Of a stretch of DNA of 64,000 bases, positions 4,890 to 26,500 are shown piece by piece. Location of the stretch: the NCBI GenBank assembly GCA_002269645.1, contig NIVC01000305.1, positions 434,001 through 498,000 on the forward strand, in the 5' to 3' direction. Position 1 is the first letter of the stretch, and the number at the start of each line of letters is the position of its first letter. This stretch comes from Macrostomum lignano (Eukaryota). A program made the position numbers and the translations under genes. A model generated the notes under the pieces. The model saw only the letters and a program-made list of their open reading frames with translations, did no database searches and had not been told where the DNA came from.

Positions 4890-6221
4890 ATGAATACGCC
4901 CTGGCAACTACGGCCTGCCGCGCTCCTTCTGCTGACGTTTGCGTTTGGCGGAATCCAACAGGCTCAGTCGAGAGGCTTTGAAGCTGAACTGCTCAAGTAT
5001 CTGAAAAACAACATCACCGATTTCAGCCGAACACTTCGACCAAACATCAATCCCGAGAAGGTAGTTGAAGTGTCAATAATGGCGTTTCCTTTCCAAATTG
5101 TGTCAGTGAACAGCGTTAAACAAAGCATGACAATAAACATAATTTTGCAACTCAGCTGGTTCAATGAGCATCTGGTTTGGGATCCTGCGAAATTCGGACG
5201 TCTGTCTGTCATAGAATGGGAAAACCAGCAGATTTGGACTCCTCCGATTGTGATTTTTAATGGCATCGGTCAAAACCAGTTCCCCGTGCTTCGGTTCCCT
5301 TTGCACTTATTATCAACTACAAGAAACCTTTCAATAGTGGCCACCTCCTGGAGAGATGAAGTGGAATTCTCTTGCAAGCTCGACATGCGCCGTTTTCCAT
5401 TTGACCGACACAGCTGCGACCTGGAGCTGTACATAGAGGACCAAGCCCACATGTACAATTCAACAGTTCCTACAGTTAAAAATCTGTGGAACGAATCAAA
5501 AGAATTCAATGAAAAAAGTGCCTACCAAGAGAGCAGTGAGTGGAGAATGTTGAACTTGAGCACACGCGTGCACATGCGACAGTTTCAAACATTCAAAAAC
5601 TCACCGCCGATTCTTCTACGGATCTACACGATGCACATAGAGATCGAGCGGGTGTCCACTTACTATGTGTTAAATGTGGTGACTCCCCTGCTGCTGCTCA
5701 CGCTGCTCCAGGTGCTCGTCTTCTTCGTGCCAGTCGAGTCTGGAGAGAAGCTGGGCTTCGGCATCACCATCATGCTGAGCTACACGGTGTTCCTGCTGCT
5801 GCTGGACGGCCTGCTGCCCAAGTCGCAGTCGATGCCGGCTGTGGCGTCGTTCATCACGGCGGCCATGGTGCTGTCGACGTCGTCTCTGCTGCTGACGTCG
5901 GTGTCGATTCGGTTCCACTTCGCTGCGGAGTCCCAGCCGATGCCGTCGTGTCTCCGGTTCGTGTTCGTGAGCTGCCTGGGCCGCGCGCTGCTGTGCGGTG
6001 AGAGGCGAGGCGGCAGCAGGACGGCACCTGAGGAAGACGCCGACGACGCCGCGGTGAGCAAAGCGGGCCATGAAGACGAGAGGCCCGTAGAGACCTCCGG
6101 AGACCCGAGGCGCTCGGAGTGGCAGGTCGCAGCGGTCGCTGTGGAACGGCTGATGATTTTCTTGGGCTGTCCGACTGCAGGGGCCATTTTGGTTGCATTC
6201 GTCATTGTTCCTCTGCTGTGA
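4890..6221 (+). CDS. Cys-loop ligand-gated ion channel subunit, nAChR-like non-alpha (gene A), single coding exon, 443 aa
   Basis: Signal peptide; RP motif; WDP; Cys-loop CKLDMRRFPFDRHSC; SEW; TM1-TM3 with SGEKLGFGITIMLSYTVF; short intracellular loop; TM4. No vicinal CC in loop C. Confidence 0.95.
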   Translation: MNTPWQLRPAALLLLTFAFGGIQQAQSRGFEAELLKYLKNNITDFSRTLRPNINPEKVVEVSIMAFPFQIVSVNSVKQSMTINIILQLSWFNEHLVWDPAKFGRLSVIEWENQQIWTPPIVIFNGIGQNQFPVLRFPLHLLSTTRNLSIVATSWRDEVEFSCKLDMRRFPFDRHSCDLELYIEDQAHMYNSTVPTVKNLWNESKEFNEKSAYQESSEWRMLNLSTRVHMRQFQTFKNSPPILLRIYTMHIEIERVSTYYVLNVVTPLLLLTLLQVLVFFVPVESGEKLGFGITIMLSYTVFLLLLDGLLPKSQSMPAVASFITAAMVLSTSSLLLTSVSIRFHFAAESQPMPSCLRFVFVSCLGRALLCGERRGGSRTAPEEDADDAAVSKAGHEDERPVETSGDPRRSEWQVAAVAVERLMIFLGCPTAGAILVAFVIVPLL

Positions 6222-7431
6222 TCAGCTGGCACCGATATGAAATTGTTGAACAAATTATTCGCGTCAGTATAATTAAATTTTGGCTTAGGCACAATGCTTT
6301 AGTCTGACTGCCCGCGTTTCCTGCAACCCATTTTTTGGCCTCTCTGGACGGAAAGCCATGGAGCGGTGCGTGCGCGTGAAGTGTCTGGTCACAGCGCGAA
6401 TATCAACTTCTACTGAAATCAATTTCGTCAGTAGTATCTGCAGTGCATGCATCGGTCTTAGTTTGTTTGAGTAGCTTTTTTAATTCGTGAGAAGTTCTAT
6501 CATTTACTCAAAAAATAGCGTCTATGTCCCTAAGCTACTGAACTCAAAATTTAAGCAACCCATGTCGGCTTTTTTTCTCACAAGTGGCGAAAATCAGCAG
6601 TCCCACTTTTCCTGTTGCCGCCATACAAAGTGGCCTATCTAGGCAAGACATGTGGCCTAGAACACGACTGCGCGTTAGCCCTCCATAATTTTATGACTAA
6701 ACTCAGACGCTTTTAGGGAAAAAAAAGCCTCTTTGTTCTTTTTGGGTGAGCAAGCTAAGTCTAAAAAATCGATTGGAATTCTTTTAGTGTCCCTACCTGA
6801 GGACCAAAGCAAACACTGCAGAGACTTCTCTGTCTCTTGGCTCAAATTCTTTGCAAAATGTAATATTTTTCTCAGCTATAGCAGATCTATAATAAAGAAT
6901 TGATGCAATTTAGTCAACAGTCAGTATCATTTGCTTACCAAGTACATTGGTGCATTCATATACATCCATTTAGTTTAGTTAATTGATTTTTAAGCAGTTA
7001 AAACACTTGAAAGAGGTTTATTTTAATCGCAAGTGAAAAGTACTTGGATTTCTTGGATAAGCGAATTTTATAAGGAATATATCGTGTAGTTGCATGTAGG
7101 AAAGTTGTCGGGAGCAATGACTGTTCAGAGAAAATTTCGTTAAATAAAGGGATTTTCATTATCACTTTTTTGAGGTTCGTGTAACGACAGAAAGATTCGA
7201 ACACTAAGACAAGGTTATGGGGGTTAAAACAAGTGACGCGCAAAGAAATCAATAAACACGTAAAACAGATGAAAAGAAAAGTTATTCTGCATAAAAAAGG
7301 ATCTGAATTTCGCGAGATAATCCGACGATTTTCAAAATCAAAAAATTTTCATTGCTGTTACTTAACAGTAGTAAAATATCACATGCGTATCTAAAAAACA
7401 GCAAAACAAAAGTCGGGCAATCGGAAAGCAG

Positions 7432-8735
7432 TTATTCGACGAAGGGTGGAACCAGAAACGCAAACAAAATGGCGACAATCGCCACGCAGCCCACGACGGC
7501 CATCAGCCGCTCCACGGCGGTTGAAGCTGTTTTCCAGTCCGAGCGCCTCTCGCCGTCGTCACCCGCCTTTCTCACCACAGCGTCGTCGGCGTCTTCCTCA
7601 GGCGCCGTCCTGCCGCCGCCTCGCCTCTCACCGCACAGCATCACGCGGCCCAGGCAGCTCACAAACACGAACCGAAGACACGACGGCATCGGCTGAGACT
7701 CCGCAGCGAAGTGGAACCGAATCGCCACCGACGTCAGCAGCAGAGACGACGTCGACAGCACCATGGCCGCCGTGATGAACGACGCCACGGCCGGCATCGA
7801 CTGCGACTTGGGCAGCAGGCCGTCCAGCAGCAGCAGGAACACCGTATAGCTCAGCATGATGGTGATGCCGAAGCCCAGCTTCTCTCCGGACTCGACGGGA
7901 ACGAAGAAGACGAGCACCTGGAGCAGCGTGAGCAGCAGCAGGGGAGTCACCACATTCAACACATAGTAAGTGGACACCCGCTCGATCTCCAGTCGTACCA
8001 CGTAGGTCGGCAGTTTCATTTTCGGTTGTCCCTTGAAAACCGCATATTCTTTGTAGCGCACGAACGTGCTCAAGTTCAGCAGATTCCATTCGCTGTTCCT
8101 AACATAGGCCCCCACTTCATTGAATTCCACTGATGGGCCATACTGAAGGCTGCCCTTTTTTACAGCAGGTTGTCCTTTCCCCGCCCCTGGTCGTTAGCGA
8201 ACAGCTCCAAGTCGCAGGTGTGCCGATCGAACGGGAACCGACGCATGTCGAATTCGCAGGAGAACTCCCATTCACGCCTCCAGATGGCTGATACCACTGA
8301 CTTGTCTGGTGCCACGGATGTGATGAACGGCGGAAACTGTGGACTTAGCAGCTGGTTGTCTCCGATGCCATTGTACACAAATATCACAGGAAAGTAGATC
8401 TTGCCGATCTCCCAATCCATCACGGTGATGTTGCCAAACTCCTTAGGATCCCAGACCAGTCTTTCCTCATACCAAGTTGCAAACATCAGGGCAGTAATTT
8501 TAATACTCTGCTGTACGCTGTCCACCATCACAATCTGACCCATCACGGTGGACAAGTAGACGCTCATTGACTGACTGTCCAAGGCTGGTCGCAGAGTCGG
8601 GCTGTAGTCCGTGATGTTGTTTTCCAGATACTTCAGCAAAGCCGCTTCGAAATCTTGCTTAGGCATCTTGGAGTAGCAGCTGGTCAGCTGGGTTGCGATG
8701 GCAACAAAAAATAATAATTTGCTGAGTCCTAACAT
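7432..8735 (-). pseudogene. Cys-loop nAChR-like subunit (gene B) with one frameshift near 8156-8162 (pseudogene or assembly indel)
   Basis: ATG at 8735 (MLGLSKLLFF...). The ECD with CEFDMRRFPFDRHTC stops at GRGKDNLL* (8160). The continuation KKGSLQYGPSVEFNEVGAYVRNSEW...TM4 is in another frame (ORF 7432-8130). The break sits at an A6 run. Confidence 0.85.
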
Positions 8736-9376
8736 TTCGGCAAAACTATTAGTCAAAGGCTCGCGTGACGAGTGCATTAATTCCACGAGAGTGAATGTCT
8801 TTTATGCTGCATCTCGACAGTCTCAACTGTTTCTACACAGCCAATGGAAGTGCAGTTTAACAAAAGCTTTTCCCACCGAACAGGTTTGGCAAACATAAGG
8901 TTCAGTTGGGTTGAGAGGGTTGGCTGCATATCGAGTTTCTGGATTGCAAAAGCTACAATTTGGAGCGTTCTACCAGTGCGTTTTACCTTAGGCAAATTTT
9001 ACAAATGTAACTACAACTCAATGCCACTCAAACAATCACACATCGTTGCTGGGAGCTTCCAGTAAGCTTGAAGACAAGAAATTTTACACTCCAAGAGCCC
9101 ATTGCTGAGCCTAGCTGCACATGCCTCTACCACAATGAATCTCTCGAGATCTCTCTCCCATCCCGCGCCGGTAGCTTCAGTCCCAATTACTTCTGTTTTG
9201 CTAATTCAACAGCTGGAAAATCCGTTGTCATGGACGCTAGCGCAAGCTATTTATGGAAAGCAAGTGAAATTTATTATTCATGCAGCTGAGTCCACTTCTC
9301 AACAGTGAATTGGAGGGAGGACAATTTTGCATTTCTTCTGAGGCAGTAAAACACAGGTTCTCGCCGTGCGAGTCAC

Positions 9377-10094
9377 ACCCATTAGGGCCTAACAACCATT
9401 AGGGCCTAACACCCATTAGGGCCTAGCACCCATTAGGGCCTAACACCCATTAGGGCCTAGCACCCATTAGGGCCTAACACCCATTAGGGCCTAACACCCA
9501 TTAGGGCCTAACACCCATAGGGCCTAACACCCATTAGGGCCTAACACCCAATAGGGCCTAGCACCCATTAGGGCCTAACACCCATTAGGGCCTAACACCA
9601 ATTAGGGCCTAACACCCATTAGGGTCTAACACCCATTAGGGCCTAACACCCATTAGGGCCTAACACCCATTAGGGCCTAGCACCCATTAGGGCCTAACAC
9701 CCATTAGGGCCTAACACCCATTAGGGCCTAACACCCATTAGGGCCAAACACCCATTAGGGCCTAACACCCATTAGGGCCTAACACCCATTAGGGCCAAAC
9801 ACCCATTAGGGCCTAACACCCATTAGGGCCTAACACCCAATAGGGCCTAGCACCCATTAGGGCCTAACACCCATTAGGGCCAAACACCCATTAGGGCCTA
9901 ACTCCCATTAGGGCCTAACACCCATTAGGGCCAAACACCCATTAGGGCCTAACTCCCATTAGGGCCTAGCACCCATAAGGGCAGCTAACACCTATTAGGG
10001 CCTAACACCCATTAGGGCCTAACACCCATTAGGGCCAAACACCCATTAGGGCCTAACTCCCATTAGGGCCTAACACCCATTAGGGCCTAACACC
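9377..10094. repeat. 17-bp tandem satellite containing TTAGGG, about 42 copies
   Basis: Unit ACACCCATTAGGGCCTA, period 17 (9431, 9448 and onward). Confidence 0.95.
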
Positions 10095-10290
10095 CAGAGT
10101 ACATGTCTGACGATTAGAAAGTCTGTGCCGCTGTACACGAGTCTAACATAAAGGCTAACTAAGCCGCTCTAACAATAGGAAAAACTTGAAAATGTTCATT
10201 TAGTTACGTTTAAATAAAGTAAAAAGTACAATTTAACAGAAGCGTTGACTATCTGTACGACTGCAAATATTATTGCTTGTTAGTAATGTA

Positions 10291-11030
10291 CGAGGGGTGT
10301 CCCAGAAGTAGTGTCACTTTTGCTTGCTTCCATAAGTATTAATGTGTGTTTAAAAAATCATATGCCTTAAAAGTTAGCGGCTTATTTTAGCTTTCATGCC
10401 ACGAAAGTCCGATATTTATAAGTGCTTCCTGCTGTAAGCAGCATGCATTTGTTCGCATACCCTTAGCCATAGAAATACACACCGCATTGTGCTTCTATGC
10501 TCACTCAGAACAAAGCCACAAGTACAGCTGATCAAGCACAGAGGTGCAAGACAGCGGCTGCAAGATTTGTTCCAGTCATGGACCCTAACATTCACTCTAC
10601 AGAAGGGCGGAGACATGCAATTTTTACACTTTAGAGTCTTGGTCTGAAATGCCCTGAAATTCGCGAAAACTGACCCGCATTCACGGTCCCGATCCAATCA
10701 GTTAACGAACAGTTTACAGGTGGATCGAACAGTTCGAGGCTGGCTGTAGATATCAAAGGCCAACCACCTTTGGGTAAGTTGGCAAAACATACTGCCGGTC
10801 AGCCTCGAGCTGCTGTCTTACAACTCTGTGCTTGATCAGCTCTACTTGTGGCTTTCTTCTGAGTGAGCATAGAAGCACTATGCGGTGTGTATTTCTATGG
10901 CTAAGGGTATGCGAACAAATGCATGCTGCTTACAGCAGGAAGCACTTATAAATATCGGACTTTCGTGGCATGAAAGCTAAAATAAGCCGCTAACTTTTAA
11001 GGCATATGATTTTTTAACACAAATTAATAC
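10291..11030. mobile_element. Foldback/MITE-like element with about 220-bp inverted arms and a mariner-like left end
   Basis: Arms at about 10336-10559 and 10809-11030 are reverse complements with few mismatches. Left end TA-CGAGGGGTGTCCCAGAAGTAGTG resembles a similar end at 37402 (TA-CAAGGGCTGTCAAAAAGTAGTG). The matching right tip was not found. Confidence 0.7.
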
Positions 11031-11069
11031 ACCTTTTCACGTTCAATTTTGATCAATGTCCAGTTCTAA

Positions 11070-11205
11070 AAAAACTAGCGGAAATTCAATTCAGACTGAA
11101 GATGATATTGTGTATGGCTAAACCTTACTTCGGTTAGAATGTTTTGAGCTGGGGTTAGACTGGGCCCCAGTCTAAATTGTCTGAATTGAATTTCCGCTAG
11201 TTTTT
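11070..11205. mobile_element. Small MITE with perfect 27-bp TIRs
   Basis: AAAAACTAGCGGAAATTCAATTCAGAC (11070-11096) and GTCTGAATTGAATTTCCGCTAGTTTTT (11179-11205). Not seen at the paralogous position downstream of gene D. Confidence 0.7.
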
Positions 11206-11369
11206 CCGCTAGAAGCCACAACAGCACAAGATTTCCTACCGAATGAAGGTTGCGAGGGGTACAAGAGGCGAGTTAAAGACCTAGGAACAGAGTAGAGAAC
11301 GTTACCAATCTTAGTTTTTATGTCAAGTTCGATCAGCAGCAGCAACTTATTGAAAAACCTGTTGCAAAT

Positions 11370-12695
11370 TCAGTCAACGAAAGGCCGAACCAGGAACACG
11401 CAGAAGATGGCGACGGTAGCCACGCAACCCACGACGGCCATCAGCCGCTCCACAGCGACCGCTGCGACCTGCCACTCCGAGCGCCTCGGGTCTCCGGAGG
11501 TCTCTACAGGCTTCTCGCCGTCATCCCCACTCGCCTTGCTCACGTTGTCGGCGTCTCCCTCTGGCGCCGTCCTGCTGCCGCCTCGCCGCTCACCGCACAG
11601 CATTGCGCGGCCCAGGCAGCTCACGAACACGACCCGGAGACACGACGGCATCGGCTGAGACTCCGCAGCGAAGTGGAACCGAATCGCCACCGACGTCAGC
11701 AGCAGAGACGACGTCGACAGCACCATGGCCGCCGTGATGAACGACGCCACGGCCGGCATCGACTGCGACTTGGGCAGCAGGCCGTCCAGCAGCAGCAGGA
11801 ACACCGTGTAGCTCAGCATGATGGTGATGCCGAAGCCCAGCTTCTCTCCGGACTCGACGGGAACGAAGAAGACGAGCACCTGGAGCAGCGTAAGCAGCAG
11901 CAGGGGAGTCACCACGTTGAGCATGTAGTAAGCGGACACTCGCTCGATCTCCAGTCGTACCACGTAGGTCGGCAGCGGCATTTTCGGTAGTTCTTTGAAA
12001 ACTTTATAAAAGCGGAAGTGCACGAAGGTGCTCACATTTAGTATTCGCCATTCACTGTTTTCTCTATAGGCAGACAACTCATTGTATTCCAGACCCTGTG
12101 CGAGCATGTTGCCCTTGTGCGGCATCACCAGCTCGTTTCCGCGACCCATGTCGTACATGTAGAGCTCCAAGTCACAGGTGTGCTGATCGAACGGGAACTG
12201 CCTCATGTCGAACTCGCAGGAAAACTCCCAGCTCCGTTTCCAACTAGCGCTTACTACGGTGGAATTCGGCGACACGGAAGTCAGGAATGTGGGAATCTGG
12301 GGCTTCATCAGCTGATTGTCGCCGATACCATTGTACACAAAAATGATGGGGAACCAGATCTGGCTGGTGCCCCAGTCCACGACCGACACTCCTCCGAACT
12401 CGGACGGGTCCCACACCAGGCGCTGCTCCTCCCAGGTGGCCAGGAGCAATGCAGAAATCTTGAAGCTCTGGCTGGCGCTGTCAACAGACACGATTTGATT
12501 TACCATGACGGCCACAGAGATGTTCACAACCTCTGTGTGGTTAAGTCTTGGTCTGACCATCGGGTGATAGTCGGTGATGTTGTTCTTCAAGTACTTCATG
12601 AGCTCGATTTGTGGATCAGATGCGTTGCACAGTGGCAGAGCAGCAACGAGAGCCACTGCTGGCAAAAACAGCAGGTCCACTCTTGGATGAAGCAT
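11370..12695 (-). CDS. Cys-loop nAChR-like subunit (gene C), single coding exon, about 441 aa
   Basis: ATG at 12695 (MLHPRVDLLFLPAVALVAALPLCNA signal peptide); CEFDMRQFPFDQHTC Cys-loop; GEK M2; four TM segments; intact ORF. Confidence 0.95.
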   Translation of the reverse strand: MLHPRVDLLFLPAVALVAALPLCNASDPQIELMKYLKNNITDYHPMVRPRLNHTEVVNISVAVMVNQIVSVDSASQSFKISALLLATWEEQRLVWDPSEFGGVSVVDWGTSQIWFPIIFVYNGIGDNQLMKPQIPTFLTSVSPNSTVVSASWKRSWEFSCEFDMRQFPFDQHTCDLELYMYDMGRGNELVMPHKGNMLAQGLEYNELSAYRENSEWRILNVSTFVHFRFYKVFKELPKMPLPTYVVRLEIERVSAYYMLNVVTPLLLLTLLQVLVFFVPVESGEKLGFGITIMLSYTVFLLLLDGLLPKSQSMPAVASFITAAMVLSTSSLLLTSVAIRFHFAAESQPMPSCLRVVFVSCLGRAMLCGERRGGSRTAPEGDADNVSKASGDDGEKPVETSGDPRRSEWQVAAVAVERLMAVVGCVATVAIFCVFLVRPFVD

Positions 12696-13201
12696 TGCCA
12701 AACTCAAAATAAGAAAGTGTTTGCCGAAACTCAGCCCCTCTCTGGATAAATATCAGCTTTTGTAGGATCTTTTTCCTTAGTTCAACACAATTTATTTTAA
12801 CGTCGATTTTTATCGATCGGCCTTAAATTTAACGAACCAACAGCAAAAATTTCTCAAATTGATTTCTCAACCACCACTATGTAGTTGCCAGAATTCTTCC
12901 CGCTAATTGGCTAGGCACCTAGATACCAATTAAAAAGAGCATGGGATGTGGCACAAGAAATGATTGACACTTGTAGTAAAATCCACTCTCGACAAAAATT
13001 TAGCATTCAGCCAAAAGAGCGAAGCGTGGAAATTGATTCTCAAGATCTGTTTAGCAACTATGTTAACAATTACGTTTTGGATTTGGCAAGGATTCTGTTT
13101 ACCTCAGAGGATAATATTCAGCATTACTTTTAGTAGAAGAGACGATATTTTAATCTCAAAAATGCTTTACGCGAGCAATCTACGTTTTATAATCGTCTCA
13201 T

Positions 13202-15401
13202 TGATGTAACCGTCCTTGTCGCCTGTCCGCTCCGTAGAGAGACGAACGCATGACTAGAGGGGGCAATGATCGTAGGCTGCCTATGACCGGGCAATGACCT
13301 GACGGACCTCCAGCACCAGACTGTCCCGCCCACATGACTAGTAGCTTTGGTAGCGCTTCGTGACCAGAGGGCCAAGGACCCACATGGACCCCACCTGTAG
13401 CCAAGGTGCAATAGTTGGTCACTCGGTCATGGTATGACCGAGTGGCTGCCACCACTCTATGTGACCTGGCGCACCTGGATCTTGCTACCAGACCTCTCGA
13501 GGTTAGAGCCCCGCCTGGGATGGTTACCAGGGGATTTAGGCTAACAGGGGAGACGCATGCAGCCGAGTACAGGGACTCTGCTTGGGGCATGATCGGGAAC
13601 TCTGGGCTCAATCCTGGAGGATTTCTCAGCAGGGGATCCTTTGTGGCTGTGAGCGAGGCTGACTTGCGACTTTGATTACTAAGAGTAGTATGAGGCGAAC
13701 ATGTACTGTCTCTAGTTTAGATTGCTCAGGGCGAAGGGACGCGTTAGCATGGGGTTGCAACCTTCCTACTGCCATTCTGTGCCAAGACTCGCCAATACCC
13801 TCTACTGCACGCACTCACGGACCCGCGGCACGCACTCACACAGGCGGGCGTTGCGCGGGGAGAGGCCATTAGCTTACCCAAACTTCCTTATGCTTTGCCA
13901 CCCCGGGAGAAAGGCTTAGCAAGCCATGAGTGAAATGATGGTGAAAGAGTGAATAATGATGAGGTTAGTTAATAGTTAATAATTAGGCCCTAAGGAAAAT
14001 AATCAGGCAATTAGGCGGCTTCACTATTGAGTAAAAATACAGCAAAAGGTACGGTATCACAACTGGCTCAGCTCTCTAACCAGACAATGGAAAAATAGGC
14101 AAACCCCGGATAAGCAAGGGCAATTAGAGCACAAATTAGTAAAAGGAACTTACCGGCAGCTGCACAGAGAGAGAGAGAGAGGCGGAGTGACCGAGGGCGG
14201 CTGTAGGCTGCAGTCAGGCAGACAGTGAAGCGGCGAGGCGCTGATGTAGATCAGGCAAAGCTGATGATGCTGGGCGGTATCAGACCGCTGGCCAATAGGC
14301 GAGCTCACTTGGGGAGCTGAAGATAACTTGGCGGTAACAGACCACGGACCGGCAGGGATTCGTCTTATAGACGAATGGGTCAGAACTCAGTCTGACGGCA
14401 AGTCTAAAGAAAGACTAGGAGCCCGAAGGTTGAGGATTCTCATGCCGAAAACCGCTTCCTTTTATAGCCTTCCCAGCCGCCGCTCCAAGGTCGTTTCCAT
14501 GACTCCCTCTCTCTGATTGGCTGCCGGCCGAATGACGTCAGAATGAGTCATGATGAGAAACATGAGACCGGCATAGCAACATGAGAAATAGGGAAATTGC
14601 GCAATCCGGAGGTGGGGTTGGGGGGATAATTGGCGCAGCGGGTGGTCGCGAAAGTGTTGCGCAAGCAAACATTGAGAACAATAGGGCCGGGGTCGAGAAC
14701 AAAGGAATTCGAAATCGGGGACAATTGGGGAGAATTGAGAACAATAGAAAAGCAAACATTGGAGAAAAGGTGATAATTAGGTGCAAAAACGAGAACAAAA
14801 GAAAGAGAAAATCGGAGAAAATGTGATAATTGGTGGGGGTAAAGAGAACAAAAGAATCAAAAACGAGAACAATAGAAGCGGAGGTGGGGTGGGTGCCGCA
14901 TGAGAAATTTGGGGAGGAGAAGAATAGCATGAGAAAAGGTTGCGCAAGAGAGGGGGATGAGTCATCGATGAGTCATCGAGGGGAAGAAGGGGTCACACGA
15001 CTTGCGTCACCGTTTGGGAGCTTGGGAAGGGATGGGAGGTCGGTGAGCACACAAAATACTGTAAGTAGACGCAGAGAAAGAGGGGACAGCGCAAGAAAAG
15101 AGTGCAGAGAGAGACAAAAAGAGGGGGGATAGGGAAAGTACAAGAAGAATAGGGTGGAGCGCAGAGGAGATAAGGTAGAGGGGGAGCTACAGAGAGGGAT
15201 AGGGAGCTCCGGAAAGGCAGGTGTGACGGCAGGGGAGACGGAGCCAAGGCAGCAGGGGGGTGCAGCAGAGCGGGAGTCTCTAGGCCTGGTCGGAGACCTG
15301 GCCGAGTCTCGACAGCTCTGTGCAGGGGAGGTGCACGGGATAGGAGGCACTTTCGAAAAAGTTCCCATGCCCTATCCCGCGACCAGAGCGTGGTTACATC
15401 A
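13202..15401 (-). mobile_element. 2.2-kb solo-LTR-like insertion (TG...CA, 4-bp TSD)
   Basis: Perfect terminal inverted TGATGTAACC...GGTTACATCA; TSD TCAT at 13198-13201 and 15402-15405. The paralogous empty site upstream of gene D (about 26625-26640, CTGTCTTATCTGACACTTA) matches the rejoined flanks. No recognisable coding domain. Confidence 0.8.
14458..14550 (-). promoter_or_regulatory. LTR U3-type core promoter (AP-1, CRE, CCAAT, TATA) on the minus strand
   Basis: Minus-strand GGCTATAAAAGG (14458-14469), CCAATC (14515-14520), palindromic TGACGTCA (14533-14540) and TGAGTCA (14544-14550, also 14958 and 14969). Motifs are seen directly; activity is inferred. Confidence 0.5.
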
Positions 15402-15886
15402 TCATCTGATACTTATGTCTTAAACAAGGACGACTTAAGTAGAATGACGGGAAACCTCGTTTCTTGGAAAACTTTTGAAGGCAGTCTTTTCCGAAAAAAT
15501 ACACAACGGAAAAATCTGAATATAATAAGGTTGACGTCATTCATTTTGACGGTTTATTTTGTAAAATTGTTTACCCGAGACTGATCAGAAGTGATATTTT
15601 TATTTATATAATATGACGAAATTGTCGGGCATTAAAAACTGCCTAACCATGCACTTAAATTCTGTGGGACAACTAAAGACTCGGACAATCGAACATGTAG
15701 TCGTCATGTTGCCGTCGAAAGCCATTGAAAAAAGAATGAAAGTTGCTTAGCTTAGCTTAGTAGCTTGAGTAGCTTAGCTCTGTCTGTAGGATAGCAGCTA
15801 GGCTTGTCATTCTCGTCCAGGACCTCTGGACCTCGTCACGCTGCAGGAGGTTTCTATCGTGGCTAAGTGTCTATGGCTACTCTTTC

Positions 15887-16019
15887 TCCTAATTTGTCAA
15901 TTAAGGACCATAGACATTATAGGCATACGTCATTAGATGATGGGTCATAGGTCATAGGGCATATATGTCATAGATGACCTATGCCTATACGTCTATGATC
16001 CTAAATTGACAAATTAGGA
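15887..16019. mobile_element. Small MITE-like inverted repeat
   Basis: TCCTAATTTGTCAATTAAGGACCATAGAC versus GTCTATGATCCTAAATTGACAAATTAGGA: about 40-bp imperfect arms. Confidence 0.55.
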
Positions 16020-16519
16020 AAGCACATGTGGCTCACATGTGGCTCAGTAGAACAGCAGAAACCGACCTAGATTTTGTTGACTCAGTCCAGTGGCTCGCAT
16101 TGCCTCCTGCACTGTTCGGACGAACCTTTCTGCGAGCCCGTTGCTTTTCGGATGGTACGGCGGTGTTGTTACATGCTGGCAACCAACACTCTTGAGCCAA
16201 TTGGTTGTGTCGCGACTTTCCTAGTCATTTCTTTAGTTCACTTTTACTTGTCCGTGTTTACTCCCTTTTCTCTCTCTCTGTCTAGCTCAATCTTGTTATT
16301 CTCATCTCTCTCTCCCTCGCCGCTTCTGATTGGCTCTCCATTCTAGCCTCCCTCTTTAGTCGCGCACACCACCCCTCCTTTTATTAAATTGGAGTCAACC
16401 CCCTCTAAGATAGTCGGATAAATATACTGGTTTGGGCCCTGCGCCCACTTACTTCCTCTCTGCTCTTCTGTCTCTGCAATTTAATTATAGTTTATACTCT
16501 TATTTTCTCGATAGGTTGT

Positions 16520-19500
16520 AACCAACTGCGTCTATTGTCAGTCACCAGAGTCCTAGGAATTCCGAGCTGCGAAAAAGTTCGTCGTAGCCGAGACACCCTG
16601 TGGCTGATTCCCTGTCGTTAGTCAGATGGACTTCTGGGTAGCTTGAGAAAGACTCTACCAACACCAATAAGTACAGCCAATTGATTGGTCCCGCAGTCGG
16701 GACGATTCCATGACTCTGTAGTCTGTGGCCAGGAACTGAGGTGATTCCGGTTGCTCGATTTGACCATCTTGTACATTGTACACCTGCTGATGTAGTCCAT
16801 GACTTTGTAGCGTATTCACTAATATTATAAAAGTATTGCAGCTAGCGTATTATAATTACTGTATTCTAGAAACTTCCGCGTAAACACGCACTTTCCATAT
16901 TTGGCGTTTTGAATTCCCGCGCACCCCCTTTCTAGAAACTGCTTCTCGAACTTTCCGGATTCCGGAATGTTCCATCAACACGAATATAAATATACAGCAC
17001 CCTAGCACGCAATTACTCAAGCCCATTCTCTCTATTCTTTTCCACACGGAAACAATCAAAGAAAAATTAAAGCAAACGAACCACCGCTTTCCACGCCTCA
17101 ATTATTTTCGCTATTCTACAACTGGTCCGGTGAGGCGTCCAAAATTCATCTGAGTCCCCAGCAAGGGGCTAGGCCGTCGAAGTGCGTGTAAATATCCGTG
17201 TAAATACTGCCTGAATGTAGCATAACGCCATCATCGACATTGCCATCAACGCCATGCCTCATCGTCGTCTGCACGCGCCCGTCGTCCACGCCACTACTGG
17301 ATATAGCTACCGGATGCATCATACGTGTACGACACGATATTAACCTGATCGACGTAATTCTACAAACGTGGTATCGAAGTTGACACGGAACTCATCGACG
17401 ACAGACAGACAAATGCCTACACGGGTATTACCAGGCCGTTCGATAGAGTCTTCCGTGAACCCCACCAAATTCTACGCCAAAATAAGCCGAAATATCACCA
17501 GTCAACCAAGCTGCTATTGACCAAGGAACGCGCGGCTGAAACCTTCGGCGATCGTCTTTATATGACACCTTCCACGAGGTGATCGACATCCCGAGGGGCA
17601 ACCCAGCCTGTCAATCGGTTCGCCTTGTGCGCTCCATCAGCCATGCCCAGCAATATTCAGCGACCGCCCGCCGTCGTCCTCATATTAGTCTCGGGAGTCT
17701 GTCTGCAATTCGAAAGGTCGTCCTGCCTGACGATCCGTCGTCCTGGAGTGTGGCTGAGCGTGCCACAAGCATCCCAAGTTCTCCTACCAGAAGCGCGTTG
17801 CGTGTACACCTGCTACGAGATGCCTACCGGAGCAGAGCGACAGCCCGCCTCGACTCACGGTGCACCGATCTTGTTCCGGGTGTCGTCTGTCTGCATCCTG
17901 GCACATTCCGTCTATGTACATTGCTATTCGGCCAACCGGGGGCATCGCAGTAAGGTCTGATTTGCGAAATGACTAATTAATCAAGCAGCTTGACTTCACC
18001 AGTAATAACGTTTCACTTATTATTGAATATGTACATCATCGCCCCTATGCTGTAACAGTTTGAAATCTGCATGTACAAACGTACATGTCCACGCCCCCCC
18101 CCAATTCATCATCTAATGTATATATTTTTTTCCGGTACTTCTCCAGGTGACTCCGTCTCCGGCGGGGGAACTGTTGTAGCGTATTCACTAATATTATAAA
18201 AGTATTGCAGCTAGCGTATTATAATTACTGTATTCTAGAAACTTCCGCGTAAACACGCACTTTCCATATTTGGCGTTTTGAATTCCCGCGCACCCCCTTT
18301 CTAGAAACTGCTTCTCGAACTTTCCGGATTCCGGAATGTTCCATCAACACGAATATAAATATACAGCACCCTAGCACGCAATTACTCAAGCCCATTCTCT
18401 CTATTCTTTTCCACACGGAAACAATCAAAGAAAAATTAAAGCAAACGAACCACCGCGTTCCACGCCTCAATTATTTTCGCTATTCTACAACTTCCTTGTC
18501 CAAAGCTGGCCACCAGTATTGTGAGCGTATTAAAGACTTAGTCCTTTCCATGCTCAGGTGCGTCGAATGAGCTTTCTCCATGATCGTTTGTCTCAACGCA
18601 CGCGGTGGAACTACTCTCAATCCTCTAATAACCATTCCGTGTCCCATAGTTAGTTCGCTGGACACCATCTTGTAAGGCCGTAGGTCCTGGTGGTTGAAAT
18701 TTCCAGTTCGGATCGTTTCTTGGAGTCGTTGTAACTCCGGACATTGCTCGGACTGAATCCGCAACTGCTCAATAGTTGAAGTCGGGTGAGCCAGCTCAAC
18801 ACTGCCAATGCTGAGTGTTTGCCCCTGTCAAAAAATGCAAGAAGTCGAGACAATGCATCGGATTTCATCAGGCCAGACCTCTGATACCTCTGCGGATCAG
18901 GCCGTCCTCCAGTACGAAGCCTAGAAATCGCATCTTTCGCTGAGAGATTTGGCAATTCCTGTCGTTAATTTTGAGATTGTGCTGCTGAAGCCTCGCTCTG
19001 ACCAGCGCTTCCCTTTGTTTCAACTGCTCCTTAGTCTGGTCGCCAATTAGTATGTCATCAATAATAGGCTACGGCTCTTTCAATTCCCTGCACGAGCTGT
19101 GTGTTATCTTTGAAATATGTGGGCGCTTTAGTGATACCAAAAATCAGCCGATTATATTGAAAATTTCCAAATGGAGTCGACATAACAGTCAATGGTTTCG
19201 AGTCGTCCTCCAACTCGATCTGATTATAAGCTGGCTCTAGATCCAGGATAGTATACCAGTGACACCCTGAAACTGCACTGAAGGCTTCTTCGGCCGTTGG
19301 CATAGGATGGCTGTCCCTTACCATCTGGGGGTTTAATGTCTTTTTATAATCGACACAGAGTCTGATGTGTCCATCCGGCTTTGGCCGGAAAATATGAAAT
19401 GGTAGTTCGTGAAGCTTGTCTTGAAACTGGACTGTTCCTTTGAACTGACCAAGCGTCTGGAACTCGTATGTGTCCACGTAACCTGTCAGTTTCAGTTCAC

Positions 19501-20640
19501 TGGTCTGTAGCCGTGGCCTGCCGATTAGTCCAGACTGCATCCGACATCACGGACCCCCGTGTCCAGTTGACACTGAATCGGGATTTTCTTGTCTTCGTGC
19601 ACAAACTGTAGGGTGACGCAGATGGCATCCTGAGTCGGGCCTATAATTGCTCCAATTGTGAACTGGTCTCCATTCATCGCTAGGGACTTGCTGGACACAA
19701 ACTGCACTGAGTCGACACGGCCTGCAGCGTCTATCTTCGTCTGGCACGCCTTTTGAAAGTGGTTCAGCTTGCCGCACTTGCGACAAGCCTTCCCAGTTGC
19801 CGGTCACTGCATTTTTCCATGCGGTGGCCCACATCGAGGACAGGTGGTACTAGTGCTACGTTTGAACTTGCCTCGACTTTGTCCTTTCGACGATTGTCCT
19901 TTGGACTTGAGCACGCCGATCTTCATGACGGCCGTACTCTCTCCTTTCGGTGCGCTCTTCATGATCTCCGTGGCTATTAAGGTGGAATGAGCCTTAGTCT
20001 CGGCAACCGCATCCTTGAAGGTCAAGATATGATGGTCCTTGACCAAAAGCTTGCCTATGATCTGTTGATCCATCAGAACGAAGATTAGTTAGTCCCGCAG
20101 GCGCTCATCCTTGTTATCAAATTTGCATTTCTCCGCCGCCCGCAGAAGCCGTTCAGCGAACGCCCGCACTGACTCTCCAGGCGTGCGCGTGCACTGTTGG
20201 AACGGGTACCGTTTAGCCAATACAAAGGTTGCCGGTACCAACAGTTCCTTTTAGGCAGCCTCCAACACCGCAGCTGACAATTGACTCGGCTTTGCTGGAG
20301 CCACACGATCGGCTACTCGGTCATATAGGGCCGGAGACAGTTTCATGAGCAGCATCTGCGTCTCGGCATCCCAGCGGTAAAATTTTCCGCAATTTCAAAG
20401 CGGTCCAACCATCGGGCGAAATTATTTCCGACGTCCAGCCGCTCGATCTCCATGGAGCCTCCTCCGGTGCGCCTTGCTGCACCAGCAACTTCATAGACTG
20501 GAGTCTTGACAACAGAGACTGCTGTCTTGGTCGACAGGCTAGCCGGTGGACCTGCTCCTGTTTTTGTAGGGGAGCCAAGTGTTTTCTCGCCTTGCCTACT
20601 TATGCCTGTAGCTGATCATGCTTGCGACGCCACTGTTACA
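16520..20640 (-). mobile_element. Degenerate Ty3/Gypsy retrotransposon (gag-pol remnant), split by a nested LTR element
   Basis: PBS-like GTGGCGTCGC near 20625-20634; gag (KCKFDNKDERLRD) and CCHC knuckles CPRC/CRKCGKLNHFQKAC; protease LDTG; RT KPDGHIRLCVDY...PFGNFQYNRL with a frameshifted YIDD; integrase zinc finger AHSTHL...WWP continuing across the insert (DKEV-MDYISRC); core LRRTFSQLGIPRTLVTDN. Many stops and deletions; matching LTRs not identified. Confidence 0.85.
16806..18489 (+). mobile_element. Young non-autonomous LTR element (TRIM-like): two 315-bp LTRs and about 1.05 kb of non-coding interior
   Basis: LTRs 16806-17120 and 18175-18489 (TGTAG...CTACA) with one visible substitution; TSD ACTT (16802-16805, 18490-18493); TGG PBS-like site after LTR1; purine tract GGCGGGGGAA before LTR2. 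Confidence 0.92.
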
Positions 20641-20769
20641 TGTATATTGCGGTCTTTACCAGGGGATTATTAGCTCCCAAGTACTGTTTATTCTCTTTTT
20701 ATTTAACAGCCAGCTTTTCGTTTCAACATAAGCCAAGGAATTTTAAATCTAGAAACTGGAATGACAACT

Positions 20770-21705
20770 GAAATATCAGCTATACAAGATGAGGCAAAGA
20801 TTAGAGATCAAGTAGGCACAGGAGTATGTCAAGCAAGCAAAGCAGCCGGACTCACAAAAAAAGAATATAAGAGAAAACGATCAACTCGGGTGAATAGCGT
20901 CGAGCATGCTTTTCCACATTAACGAGCTTGAGCTGCTCAGTAATAAAAGCCGGGCAAGACGGCGCACTGCCGTCTGACGGACAATTGTCCTGCTGGAGCA
21001 ACTGTTTGAGACTTCTAGAGCAGCTCTTTGTGGTCAAATTGGAATGCATTGGATTCAGTTGCAAGACTTCACAGAGGCCATTTAATTTACAAGCTGCGTG
21101 GCTGAACTCAGAGTTGAGGACACGGGAATGATGTAGCTGTACTGTTTTGGCGATTCTGCCCGACTGCCATAAAAACTAGGACTTCCAGCTTACAATTCAC
21201 GACTATGCTGAGAGTGTCTGCTCATTGATGCGCAGCAAATCCGGACGGCTTCTTCTCTTCGAAAACTTAGCGACCAGATCATCAAGTGAGCGAATTCTTT
21301 CACTGGCAAAATAATCTCTCTTGTTGTTCCACCTGTGCGACATCAATCTCGTGACGCCGTTGCGACGATGCGTTTTCTGATCGCGAAGCTGGTGGAGTGT
21401 TTGTGAAATATGATGGCATGCTGGTCGTGCTGTATTGGGGGAACTGCATCTTCTCCTAATCTTCTTTTTACAAGATTGGCACCTTCTTCGTGTTGTTTCG
21501 TTTTCCGATATGCATTGCTGTCCTGATTCTCAGTAATAAAATCTGATTCCGTGAAGTGAAGAGAGCAAATTCGAGTGGGCTTCGATGGCTTGAAAGTTGC
21601 TTCTCGGGAAATGCTCTTTAACCATTTTCCAGCAGGTCGTCTCGATTCGGAAACTTTTGGAATGAAATCCTCGCTGACCCTGCCGTTGCCGACTTTTTTT
21701 GGCAT
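20770..21705 (-). pseudogene. THAP-domain / P-element (THAP9-like) transposase 5' remnant
   Basis: THAP core W...PTRICSLHF...RLGEDAVPPI (21343-21705), then RRYSPELIVFSYILF and, after a frame change, SPAA...LP, typical of the P-transposase N-terminus. Stops and frameshifts. Confidence 0.7.
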
Positions 21706-23529: not shown

Positions 23530-26500
23530 TTTTTATTTAACAAAAGCTTTTACCAGTGAACAGGTTCAAGTAAACAAGAAGGTTCAGTGCAGAGAGGGTT
23601 GGCTGCATCGATTTTCTGGATTGCAAAGAATACAATTTGGAATGCTTGAAGCTACGCGTCAGTTGACTAAGTTAAGTTAAGCTAAGTTAGACAATGGGAG
23701 CAGTGCACGCGTTTTACTAAGGCTATAATTTTAACTAGAATTTAATTCTTCTTAAACAGTACACACATCTTTTCTGGGAAACTGTCATCACGTTAGCTTG
23801 AAAAACAAAAAATTACTCTTTAAGAGCCCATTGTTGAGCCAACTTTTACATGCCTCTACCATACTACATCGCTATCTCCCTCTTTTCATCCCATCACGCA
23901 CCGGGAGCTTAAGCCCAATTAATTACTTCTTGTTTGCCACATTTCAATAGCAGGAAAATCCGTTGTCATAGACGCTAGCACTAGCTCTTCATTGGACAGC
24001 AAGTGATATCTATAATTCATAGGGCCGAGCTCACTTCTCAACAGTGAATTGGAGGGAGAATGATTTCGCATTTCTTCTGAGGCAGCGCGATGCAGATGAG
24101 AACTAAAAATTGCAACCCGTTTTTGCAAATTTACGGCAAACACACAAGCCATAAACACAGTCATATGAGTGATGTCGTGCGACTTACATCATGACAGCCG
24201 ACACCCAAGTCACAGAGAGTGTACATGCCTGCCGATTAGAGAAAGTCAAATTGGCGCTGTACACCTTGTGGCGAGCGTGTGTGTGACTGCGTACAGTATT
24301 GGTGCTCTTCTTAGTTAGCACTGGTTGTGACATGATGTCACTGAAGGCCTTCGGTCCTGGATGCCCATAATCCACTTGCAACTATTTATAGGTCATTTAA
24401 GCAGTTTTAAAAAAGCGTTTCACATGCCGCAAATTCCAAAGATAAAGACCAGTCTCACTGCGATTGAAAACTTTTATTGAGAAGTCACCTCTTACCAATC
24501 GAAGGACAGAAAGGACGTAGTACATTTAGAGTCTAACTTAAAGGCTAAGACCTTTGCTCTAACTAAAGAAAAAGCAAAACAATTTTTTTTTGTATCGCAC
24601 GGCTTGTACAAGCATTTTTTTCACTTCTAAGTATGAACTTATAATTAATTTGATGACAGAATAAACAAGCCGCAACGGCACAAGATTTCCTACCAAAAAA
24701 GGTTACAAAAGGCAAAACAGCGTGTTAAAACGTAGGAACAGAATAGAGAACGTTGAGAATTTTTGTTTCAATGTTTACGAGCTCGTACTACTACGATCAA
24801 TGAGTCAGCAGCTGCAACTATTCAAAATTCATTGCACGAAGGGCCGAACGAGGAACACGCAGAAGATGGCGACGGTGGCCACGCAGCCTATGATGGCCAT
24901 CAGCCGCTCCACAGCGACCGCTGCAACCTGCCAGTCCGAGCGCCTTGGCTGTCCAGAGGTCTCTCCAAGGCTCTCATCTTCGTCGCCCACCTTGCTCACA
25001 ACAGAGTCGTCGGCGTCTCTCTCCGGCGCCGTCCTGCCGCCGCCTCGCCTCTCACCGCACAGCATCGCGCGGCCCAGGCAGCTCACGAACACGACCCGGA
25101 GACACGACGGCATCGGCTGAGACTCCGCAGCGAAGTGGAACCGAATCGACACCGACGTCAGCAGCAGAGACGACGTCGACAGCACCATGGCCGCCGTGAT
25201 GAACGACGCCACGGCCGGCATCGACTGCGACTTGGGCAGCAGGCCGTCCAGCAGCAGCAGGAACACCGTGTAGCTCAGCATGATGGTGATGCCGAAGCCC
25301 AGCTTCTCTCCGGACTCGACGGGCACGAAGAAGACGAGCACCTGGAGCAGCGTAAGCAGCAGCAGGGGAGTCACCACGTTGAGCATGTAGTAGGTGGACT
25401 CGCGCTCGATCTCCAGTCGTACCACGTAGGTCGGCAGCGGAATTTTCGGTAGTCGTTTAAAAATTTTATAATAGCGGAAGTGCACAAAGGTGCTCACATT
25501 TAGTAATCGCCATTCGCTATTTTCGACATAAGTAAAAAGCTCATTGTATTGCAGACCCTGTGCGAGCATGTCGCCTGTATGTGGCATGACCAGCTTATTG
25601 CCGCGGCCCATGTCGTACATGTAGAGCTCCATATCGCAGGTGTGCCGATCGAACGGGAACTGCCTCATGTCGAACTCGCAGGAGAACTCAAAGTTTCGTT
25701 TCCAGTTAGTGCTTACTATGGTGGAATTCGGTGACACGGAAGTCAGGAATACGGGAAGCTGGGGCTTCATCAGCTGATTGTCGCCGATGCCGTTGTACAG
25801 GAATATGATGGGGAACCAGATCAGACTGCTGTCCCAGTCCACGACCGACACTCCTCCGAACTTGGAGGGGTCCCACACCAGGCGCTGCTCCTCCCAGGTG
25901 GCATATAACAATCCGGAAATCTTGAAGCTCTGGCTGGCGCTGTCAACATACACAATTTGATTAACTATGGCGGCTACAGAGACGTTCACAACTTCTGTGT
26001 GGTTGAGTCTCGGCCAGACCATCGGGTGATAGTCGGTGATGTTGTTCTTCAAATACTTCATGAGCTCGATTTGTGGATCAGATGCGTTGCACAGTGGCAG
26101 AGCTGCAACGAGAGCCACTGCTGGCAGAAGCAGCAGGTCCACTCTTGGATGAAGCATTGCCAACTCAAAATAAGAAAGTGTTTGCCGAAACTCAGCCTTT
26201 CTCTGGATGAACGTCAGTCGATACGCTTTTTCAGTTTGCCTCCAATTTAACGAGCCAACAGGAAAAAATAATTTTTCAACTACCCACTTTGCAGTTGCCA
26301 GACTTCTTTCCGCTAATTGGCTAGGCTCCTACTAGATACCAAATAAAAAAAGGGATGTGGCACAAAAATGATTGACACTTTGACACAAAATTTCACTTTT
26401 GACAAAAATTTTAGCAATTCGTCAAACTTCTCAAGATCTGCTTAGCAACTCTGGGAACAATTATATTTTCGAATTCGGCAAGAATTCTGGCATATTATGT

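What the first reader, a model, noticed from the sequence alone, without database searches (positions are those of the whole stretch)
5655..25400. Pore-domain DNA is nearly identical across paralogs whose ligand-binding domains are highly diverged (domain-restricted gene conversion)
Seen: from GEK to LLLTSV (about 165 bp), A, B, C and D differ by only 1-2 nucleotides, synonymous sites included, while the ECDs of A, B and C/D are only roughly 40% identical by eye. Flanking variants are patchwork: SIRF in A+D vs AIRF in B+C; LRFVF in A+B vs LRVVF in C+D; GGSRT and PVETSGDPRRSEW in A+C vs GGGRT and RRSDW in B+D. Purifying selection does not explain synonymous identity or incongruent sharing. Inference: recurrent conversion or shuffling keeps a common pore/assembly module while sensor domains diversify, possibly allowing combinatorial heteromers.
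Basis: partly seen in the sequence, partly recalled or inferred. Interest (0 to 1): 0.72.

Follow-up and report, generated by a model that had tools for sequence, protein, structure and literature searches.

The report
Gene conversion homogenises flatworm receptor pores
Four neighbouring acetylcholine-receptor-like channel genes of the flatworm Macrostomum lignano have old, very different ligand-binding halves but share an almost identical 400-bp membrane-pore segment, because that segment has been copied between the genes (gene conversion), a known process not found reported for this gene family.

Summary
The window is Macrostomum lignano contig NIVC01000305.1. It carries four intronless Cys-loop receptor paralogs: A 4890-6221(+), B 7432-8735(-, frameshifted), C 11370-12695(-) and D 24829-26157(-).

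- **Divergence pattern.** Extracellular-domain synonymous divergence is saturated for the A/B/C pairs (dS ≥1.4) and 0.33 for C-D. A 408-bp block (pre-M1 to the proximal M3-M4 loop) has dS 0.05-0.14 in all six pairs. Divergence returns in M4 (dS 0.8-1.7; 0.4 for C-D).
- **Codon bias fails.** About 75 identical codons are expected per pair and 111-119 are observed.
- **Mosaic.** All three possible two-by-two groupings interleave (at least 7 breakpoints).
- **GC3.** It is 0.87-0.92 in the block and 0.52-0.72 in the ECD.
- **Control.** A second tandem cluster of the same family in the same genome keeps the pore protein conserved but has TM dS 0.9-1.5. Its only tract is a short one in M2.

The best explanation is repeated, GC-biased ectopic gene conversion confined to this cluster. 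The "shared module for heteromers" idea is untested and not required. Regional conversion is well known, for example in clustered protocadherins, so this is a new member of a known kind. Read-level confirmation was not possible.

The parts
4890..6221 (+). Paralog A: intact intronless Cys-loop receptor gene (443 aa), with the most divergent ECD and M4
   Evidence: ORF. Pfam Neur_chan_LBD plus Neur_chan_memb. Cys-loop Cx13C and GEK motif.
5640..6047 (+). A: homogenised block of 408 bp, from pre-M1 (EIERVS) through M1-M3 to the proximal M3-M4 loop. The 5' edge is sharp.
   Evidence: Identity to B, C and D is 96.6%, 94.6% and 95.1%, against 54-56% in the ECD.
6090..6155 (+). A: second short converted patch before M4 (ETSGDPRRSEWQVAAVAVERLM)
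   Evidence: 1 difference in 66 nt from C, with diverged sequence on both sides.
7432..8735 (-). Paralog B: the same gene type, split into two ORFs by a 1-nt frameshift within 8163-8193, with a 9-codon in-frame deletion in the M3-M4 loop. Either a pseudogene or a residual sequencing error.
   Evidence: Three-frame translation. Pfam hits on each half.
7582..7989 (-). B: homogenised block. With A's block it forms a 408-bp, 96.6%-identical inverted repeat 1.5 kb apart.
11370..12695 (-). Paralog C: intact gene (441 aa from the ATG)
11544..11951 (-). C: homogenised block
11439..11504 (-). C: pre-M4 patch shared with A
24829..26157 (-). Paralog D: intact gene (442 aa from the ATG). It is a younger duplicate of C (ECD dS 0.33). 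The duplicated segment is 24667-26489, matching 11213-13097.
25006..25413 (-). D: homogenised block. Its 162-bp core (25150-25311) is identical to C's.

Best explanation
A-D are four old, physically clustered (within 21 kb), intronless nicotinic-receptor-like pLGIC paralogs of Macrostomum lignano. Several rounds of non-reciprocal ectopic recombination (interlocus gene conversion) have overwritten their M1-M3 region, the proximal M3-M4 loop and, for A/C, a patch before M4.

**Shown**
- The tract has diverged sequence on both sides and low dS in every pair.
- It is a mosaic of incompatible variants, so there was more than one event and the pairs have different edges.
- It is GC3-enriched, as expected from GC-biased conversion.
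- It post-dates the C/D duplication.
- It does not extend to an unlinked cluster of the same family.

**Inferred**
- Conversion nucleates in M2, the segment that purifying selection already keeps most alike. This is where the second cluster shows its only tract.
- It spreads outward until homology fails, at the ECD on one side and M4 on the other.
- Conversions reaching the ligand-binding domain are removed by selection or blocked by divergence.

The predicted product is a cation-selective channel subunit of non-alpha type with an unknown ligand.
For: - **Divergence by region.** ECD dS is 1.4 to saturated (0.33 for C-D). The block has dS 0.056-0.136. The M4 tail has dS 0.8-1.7 (0.40 for C-D).
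- **Four-fold sites.** Fisher p is 6e-8 to 2e-11.
- **Codon bias.** Under the block's own codon usage 72-78 identical codons are expected and 111-119 of about 125 are observed. Eight rare A/T-ending codons are shared by all four genes at the same positions.
- **Incompatible sites.** AB|CD, AD|BC and AC|BD sites interleave (alignment nt 800-1253), giving at least 7 breakpoints. GC3 is 0.87-0.92 in the block and 0.52-0.72 in the ECD.
- **Tract tests.** Both the max-chi-square test and the run test are significant.
- **Same-genome control cluster L002.** ECD divergence is comparable, but TM1-3 dS is 0.94-1.5, nucleotide identity 71-78% and GC3 0.55-0.79. In the 42-codon core, which is nearly identical in protein sequence (one residue differs in F3), pS is still 0.26-0.48.
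- **Short tract in the control cluster.** F1 and F3 share an ~87-bp tract in M2.
- **GC direction.** In TM1-3, A-D carry G/C where F carries A/T at 18 sites and the reverse at 2. In the ECD the counts are 11 and 9 (p 0.03).
- **Family identity.**
Against: - No reads or second assembly of the cluster could be examined. The assembly was Pilon-polished with short reads and RNA-seq (PMC5730564), which could blur a few paralog-specific sites inside a ~95%-identical block.
- Only four sequences are available, and no orthologous cluster from another species or subgenome. The classic test of concerted evolution (blocks grouping by species, ECDs by ortholog) was therefore not done.
- Block pS (0.05-0.125) exceeds the 0.022 seen between the two genome copies of a neighbouring gene. 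Outside the 162-bp core, conversion is therefore not demonstrably ongoing.
- The nucleation-in-M2 model is an inference.
Confidence: 0.85

Rival explanations
1. Adaptive constant region. Selection favours homogenisation of the pore and the inter-subunit transmembrane interface, so that subunits with different sensor domains can co-assemble into combinatorial heteropentamers. Conversion is the means and selection is the reason for the domain restriction.
For: The homogenised parts are M1-M3 and a patch before M4. By established pLGIC structure, M1-M3 line the pore and contact neighbouring subunits, whereas the lipid-facing M4 is not homogenised. A's tract edge sits exactly at the beta10/pre-M1 junction.
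Against: - The sister cluster F1-F3 keeps M2 nearly identical at the protein level without DNA homogenisation, and lets M1 and M3 diverge (dN 0.12-0.19).
- The frameshifted B is homogenised too.
- M4 and the ECD are also the most diverged parts in the unconverted cluster, so a simple homology barrier predicts the same edges.
- There are no expression or assembly data, and A-D are not among the annotated proteins.
Confidence: 0.12
2. Assembly or polishing artefact. The near-identity is produced by collapse or consensus of a repeated GC-rich block, or by Pilon correction with cross-mapping short reads.
For: The contig comes from a difficult, redundant PacBio/Canu assembly that was polished with Illumina and RNA-seq reads (PMC5730564). 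The exact-identity runs (63-174 nt) are about the length of a short read.
Against: - The block is only 408 bp and is embedded in unique sequence, far shorter than long reads.
- Each copy keeps private variants, with 30 variable sites in the block.
- Polishing can only cross-map reads between copies that are already about 90% alike or more, so it cannot turn ~55% identity into 95%.
- The raised GC3 and the sharp edges that differ between pairs are biological signatures.
Confidence: 0.04
3. No DNA exchange. The identity reflects purifying selection on the pore plus strong codon bias, or selection on a nucleotide-level element (RNA structure, small-RNA target or antisense transcript) embedded in the block.
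For: The block is very GC3-rich and encodes the most conserved part of the protein. Long antisense ORFs overlap it.
Against: - Codon-usage expectation is ~60% identical codons, against 89-96% observed, and rare codons are shared.
- The same protein segment in F1-F3 has pS 0.26-0.48.
- There is no Rfam match.
- Incompatible site patterns require exchange.
- Antisense ORFs are expected in GC-rich coding DNA.
Confidence: 0.03

Closest known systems
Regional (domain-restricted) gene conversion in clustered protocadherin variable exons (Noonan et al. 2004, PMC353213; fugu, PMC1852091; review PMC3966226)
   Same: - The genes are tandem paralogs of a neuronal membrane protein.
- The N-terminal recognition domains stay divergent while a C-terminal part of the same exon is homogenised at synonymous sites.
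- GC3 is raised in the converted part.
- Homogenisation is specific to a lineage and to a subcluster.
   Different: - This is a different protein family (pentameric ligand-gated channel).
- There are four genes rather than dozens.
- One partner is inverted.
- The tract is internal, and M4 escapes.
- There is no shared constant exon or alternative splicing.
- Identity is ~95-97% rather than >99%.
Expanded intronless, tandemly arrayed nAChR-like genes of lophotrochozoans (Jiao et al. 2019, PMC6896357)
   Same: The genes are intronless nAChR-like genes in tandem arrays in a lophotrochozoan, with highly diverse ligand-binding domains.
   Different: That study covers molluscs and annelids, not flatworms, and does not mention gene conversion (0 occurrences of the word). 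Here the point is homogenisation of one domain.
Nicotinic acetylcholine receptor subunits (Torpedo/muscle alpha, neuronal alpha7)
   Same: - They are the best solved and named homologs (E 1e-44 to 1e-42; 25-29% identity).
- The Cys-loop is present.
- M1-M3 are alignable.
- The SGEK cation-type motif precedes M2.
   Different: There is no vicinal Cys pair in loop C, so these are not alpha-type subunits. The M3-M4 loop is very short, and the ligand is unknown.

Membership tests
Pentameric ligand-gated ion channel (Cys-loop receptor) superfamily | Neur_chan_LBD and Neur_chan_memb domains above the Pfam gathering score | tested here: met
   A, C and D carry both domains (LBD 97-118 bits against a cut-off of 26; membrane domain 65-69 bits against 28). 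The two halves of B carry one domain each.
Pentameric ligand-gated ion channel (Cys-loop receptor) superfamily | Cys-loop: two cysteines separated by 13 residues in the ECD | tested here: met
   C-x13-C is present in A-D and F1-F3, e.g. CKLDMRRFPFDRHSC in A.
Pentameric ligand-gated ion channel (Cys-loop receptor) superfamily | Four transmembrane segments, M1-M3 then a loop then M4 | tested here: met
   M1-M3 align residue by residue with the Torpedo alpha subunit. A hydrophobic C-terminal M4 follows the ERLM motif. No structure was predicted.
Nicotinic acetylcholine receptor family (cationic branch) | Closest named and solved relatives are nAChR subunits | tested here: met
   5-HT3A scores lower (E 1e-25).
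Nicotinic acetylcholine receptor family (cationic branch) | Cation-type M1-M2 linker (Glu at -1' in GEK, no Pro insertion) | tested here: met
   SGEKLGFGITIMLSYTVF is present in all copies. Reading this motif as cation selectivity rests on established knowledge, not on a test here.
Nicotinic acetylcholine receptor family (cationic branch) | Alpha-type subunit: vicinal Cys-Cys in loop C | tested here: not met
   No CC dipeptide occurs anywhere in A-D or F1-F3.
Nicotinic acetylcholine receptor family (cationic branch) | Gating by acetylcholine | not testable with these tools
   This needs electrophysiology.
Interlocus (ectopic) gene conversion / regional concerted evolution | Synonymous divergence collapses inside a tract that has diverged paralogous sequence on both sides | tested here: met
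Interlocus (ectopic) gene conversion / regional concerted evolution | Mosaic, phylogenetically incompatible sites; significant shared fragments | tested here: met
   All three bipartitions interleave. The run test is significant for 5 of 6 pairs.
Interlocus (ectopic) gene conversion / regional concerted evolution | Not explained by codon bias or protein constraint | tested here: met
   and the control cluster F1-F3.
Interlocus (ectopic) gene conversion / regional concerted evolution | GC enrichment of the converted tract (GC-biased conversion) | tested here: met
   GC3 is 0.87-0.92 against 0.52-0.72. The weak-to-strong asymmetry is 18:2 against 11:9.
Interlocus (ectopic) gene conversion / regional concerted evolution | Converted regions group by species or genome copy while unconverted regions group by ortholog | not testable with these tools
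   The second genome copy (NIVC01003985.1) and sister species could not be fetched.
Interlocus (ectopic) gene conversion / regional concerted evolution | Paralog-specific sequences confirmed by spanning reads | not testable with these tools
   There is no access to reads.

The most novel reading that the evidence does not exclude
The cluster works as a constant-region/variable-region system for an ionotropic receptor. Selection keeps the pore and the subunit-contacting helices (M1-M3 and the pre-M4 helix) interchangeable by letting conversion run there. The sensor domains are protected from conversion, so one cell type can assemble many heteropentamers with different ligand sensitivities. This would be functionally analogous to clustered protocadherins, but achieved by conversion between whole genes.
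Probability: 0.1. Interest if true: 0.65.

Novelty: new member of a known kind. Interest (0 to 1): 0.36.

Why it matters
- **A clean example.** It is an internally controlled case of domain-restricted gene conversion in a pentameric ligand-gated ion channel family. My literature searches found no report of this for the family.
- **A practical warning.** In the large, intronless, tandem nAChR-like expansions of lophotrochozoans, full-length or TM-based trees can make old paralogs look like recent species-specific duplicates. ECD-only trees should be used.
- **A natural experiment.** The locus offers identical pores carrying different sensor domains.
- **If the adaptive reading were true.** It would suggest a new way of building combinatorial receptor diversity.
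- **Otherwise.** It is an ordinary consequence of ectopic recombination between linked paralogs.

Tried and rejected
- **Polymorphic-site run test on the four genes alone.** It has little power, because sites homogenised in all four copies become invariant. I replaced it with synonymous-site tests and with a run test that adds F1-F3.
- **Codon bias.** Tested and rejected.
- **RNA element.** No Rfam family matches anywhere in the window.
- **Independent copy of the cluster.** The exact proteins A, C, D and a THAP ORF are not on record. P0002 has no contig on record. The collinear second contig, NIVC01003985.1, could only be read from ~40.8 kb onward (L001). A walk via the 377-aa neighbour led back to the window's own contig.
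- **Hits first taken as orthologs.** I first read P0002/P0003 as orthologs from another species. P0002 is M. lignano, identified through its cluster member PAA92206.1. P0003 carries no taxon label, so its M. lignano origin is presumed. I therefore use them as unlinked controls.
- **Other pLGIC copies.** There are no further copies or fragments in the window.
Full report
**What is there.** The region holds four paralogous, intronless genes. They are A 4890-6221(+), B 7432-8735(-), C 11370-12695(-) and D 24829-26157(-). A tblastn search finds no further copy in the window.
- A, C and D are intact.
- B is split into two ORFs by a 1-nt frameshift within 8163-8193 (a G4CG4A3 stretch). It also lacks nine codons in the M3-M4 loop.
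- All four carry Pfam Neur_chan_LBD and Neur_chan_memb domains, a C-x13-C Cys-loop and an SGEK motif before M2, but no vicinal Cys pair.
- Their best solved relatives are nicotinic receptor subunits: Torpedo/muscle alpha and alpha7, with E 1e-44 to 1e-42. Named homologs are 25-29% identical.
- They are therefore non-alpha, presumably cation-selective, nAChR-like pLGIC subunits. The ligand is unknown.

**Where it comes from.**
- The neighbouring AMP-binding gene is 98% identical to a Macrostomum lignano protein.
- L003, from contig NIVC01000305.1 of assembly GCA_002269645.1 (Mlig_3_7), is 100% identical to window 28677-50033. The window is that contig, positions 434001-498000.
- A second contig, NIVC01003985.1, is collinear at 95-98% identity. 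This fits the redundant, neopolyploid genome described for the DV1 line (PMC5730564; PMC10733133).
- None of A, C or D is on record as an annotated protein.

**Checking the observation.** I used a codon alignment, with an N placed at B's frameshift.
- The 162-bp GEK-to-LLLTSV core has two variable sites among the four genes.
The longer motif PVETSGDPRRSEW is shared only by A and C.
- The homogenised tract is in fact 408 bp, from EIERVS just before M1 to ...EDADD after M3. Its coordinates are A 5640-6047, B 7582-7989, C 11544-11951 and D 25006-25413.
- Every pair is 94.6-97.1% identical in this tract.
- A second 66-bp patch lies before M4. It is almost identical in A and C (1 difference) but not in B.
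- ECD amino-acid identities are 45-46% (A versus the rest), 55-60% (B versus C/D) and 85% (C versus D).

**Is it more than selection and chance?** Nei-Gojobori estimates are as follows.

| Region | A/B/C pairs | C-D |
|---|---|---|
| ECD dS | 1.4 to saturated | 0.33 |
| 408-bp block dS | 0.095-0.136 | 0.056 |
| M4 tail dS | 0.8-1.7 | 0.40 |

- The tract is therefore internal, with diverged sequence on both sides.
- At four-fold sites of identical residues, the mismatch fraction falls from 0.49-0.76 in the ECD to 0.05-0.12 in the block (Fisher p 6e-8 to 2e-11). For C-D it falls from 0.17 to 0.05 (p 0.019).
- Codon bias does not explain this. Drawing codons independently from the block's own usage predicts 72-78 identical codons per pair, and 111-119 of about 125 are observed. 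Eight rare A/T-ending codons are shared by all four genes at the same positions.
- A max-chi-square test on synonymous codon identity finds a significant tract in all six pairs (p<=0.0033, the permutation floor). The edges differ between pairs.
- A GENECONV-like run test that adds three out-cluster sequences is significant for five pairs (p<=0.0005; Bonferroni 0.01). It is not significant between clusters.

**Evidence for several events.**
- Inside the block and the adjoining loop, sites supporting AB|CD (nt 800-833, 1092, 1168), AD|BC (863, 1038, 1208, 1210) and AC|BD (1149, 1205, 1253) interleave. Under infinite sites this needs at least seven breakpoints.
- B is a mosaic. It is C/D-like just upstream of EIERVS and A-like in M1.
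- The C-D block (pS 0.054) is younger than the C/D duplication (ECD pS 0.26).
- Block pS (0.05-0.125) is higher than the 0.022 between the two genome copies of the neighbouring gene. Apart from the core, most exchange is therefore not very recent.

**A same-genome control.** The closest database protein (P0002, equivalent to PAA92206.1) lies on another M. lignano contig.
- That locus (L002) holds a second tandem cluster of three intact intronless paralogs: F1 7863-9188, F2 10001-11305 and F3 12783-14105. It also holds a fragment.
- Their ECDs are as diverged as A versus B/C (dN 0.45-0.59, dS saturated).
- Their M1-M3 region has dS 0.94-1.5, dN 0.12-0.19 and 71-78% nucleotide identity.
- In the 42-codon core, which is nearly identical in protein sequence (one residue differs in F3), pS is still 0.26-0.48.
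- Neither the protein nor any family-wide nucleotide element therefore demands synonymous identity. Homogenisation is a property of the A-D cluster.
- The only tract in the F cluster is a short one (~87 bp, 2 differences) between F1 and F3, centred on M2 (run test p 0.0025).
- GC3 of the M1-M3 region is 0.88-0.93 in A-D and 0.55-0.79 in F1-F3.
- Where the clusters differ at synonymous third positions, A-D carry G/C against A/T in 18 cases and the reverse in 2. In the ECD the counts are 11 and 9 (Fisher p 0.03). This is the signature of GC-biased conversion.

**Mechanism.**
- *Shown:* DNA was exchanged non-reciprocally among four linked paralogs, and the exchange was limited to M1-M3, the proximal loop and a pre-M4 patch. 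A is inverted relative to B-D, and the A and B blocks form a 96.6% inverted repeat 1.5 kb apart.
- *Inferred:* conversion starts in M2, which purifying selection keeps most alike, and this is where the unconverted cluster shows its only tract. It extends until homology fails in the ECD and in M4, the most diverged parts in both clusters. Tracts entering the ligand-binding domain are lost or selected against.
It is not needed, and the control cluster and the homogenised, frameshifted B weaken it.

**Artefact risk.** Mlig_3_7 is a Canu assembly of PacBio reads, polished by Pilon with Illumina and RNA-seq data (PMC5730564).
- A 408-bp block inside unique sequence is far below long-read length.
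- Each copy keeps private variants.
- Polishing might blur a few sites, but it cannot create 95% identity from ~55%.
- I could not examine reads or the second contig's copy of the cluster.

**Comparison with what is known.**
- Regional gene conversion that homogenises one part of tandem paralogs while recognition domains diversify, with raised GC3, is well documented. The clearest case is clustered protocadherins (PMC1852091, PMC353213; review PMC3966226).
- Intronless tandem nAChR-like expansions are known in lophotrochozoans (PMC6896357). That paper does not mention conversion.
- Full-text searches found no report of gene conversion among pLGIC paralogs.

**Verdict.** It is a new member of a known kind and of moderate interest. 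The functional interpretation is unproven.

Noticed in passing
window 8163-8193 (gene B, minus strand): A 1-nt frameshift in a G4CG4A3 stretch splits B into two ORFs, although the rest of the reading frame is clean. Either B became a pseudogene very recently or a long-read indel error survived polishing.
   Followed up: partly
L002 7863-14105 and 16369-16671 (NIVC01000059.1, M. lignano): A second tandem cluster of three intact intronless paralogs of the same family, plus an M3-M4 fragment. Only the middle gene is annotated. F1 and F3 share a short (~87 bp) near-identical tract in M2.
   Followed up: yes
window 4890-26157: None of the intact genes A, C or D is on record as an annotated protein of the GenBank assembly. 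They may be unexpressed in the transcriptome used for annotation, or they may have been filtered out.
   Followed up: partly
window 46618-48351 (-): An intronless AMP-binding (acyl-CoA synthetase-like) gene. Apart from its own M. lignano copy, its best hits are bacterial FadD3-type or fatty-acyl-CoA synthases at ~30% identity, ahead of a nematode hit (Steinernema) and a rotifer hit (Rotaria). It is a possible horizontal-transfer candidate.
   Followed up: no
window 5640-6047 versus 7582-7989: The converted blocks of A and B form a 408-bp, 96.6%-identical inverted repeat only 1.5 kb apart. This is a potential substrate for inversion of the segment between the two convergent genes.
   Followed up: no
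window 9375-10096; 838-1324; 3456-4052: Three large tandem arrays: 17 bp x 42 between B and C, 42 bp x 11.6, and 82 bp x 7.3.
   Followed up: no
window 10336-10559 versus 10808-11030: A 224-bp inverted repeat (96% identical, ~250-bp spacer) about 340 bp downstream of gene C's stop codon. It could be a MITE-like element.
   Followed up: no
window 16805-17123 and 18174-18492; 19061-19540; 21346-21705: Between C and D lie 319-bp direct repeats (99.7% identical), a reverse-transcriptase fragment (RVT_1) and a THAP-domain ORF. These transposon remains probably account for the 12-kb gap between the C and D duplicates.
   Followed up: partly
window 48650-50070: A long GC-rich tandem repeat that stays open in several frames on both strands, giving spurious 300-440-aa ORFs. 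It lies just upstream of the AMP-binding gene.
   Followed up: no
L001 (NIVC01003985.1 40792-62510) versus window 39170-59383: A collinear second copy of the locus at 95-98% identity within the same assembly. It is consistent with the subgenome or haplotype redundancy reported for the DV1 line.
   Followed up: partly
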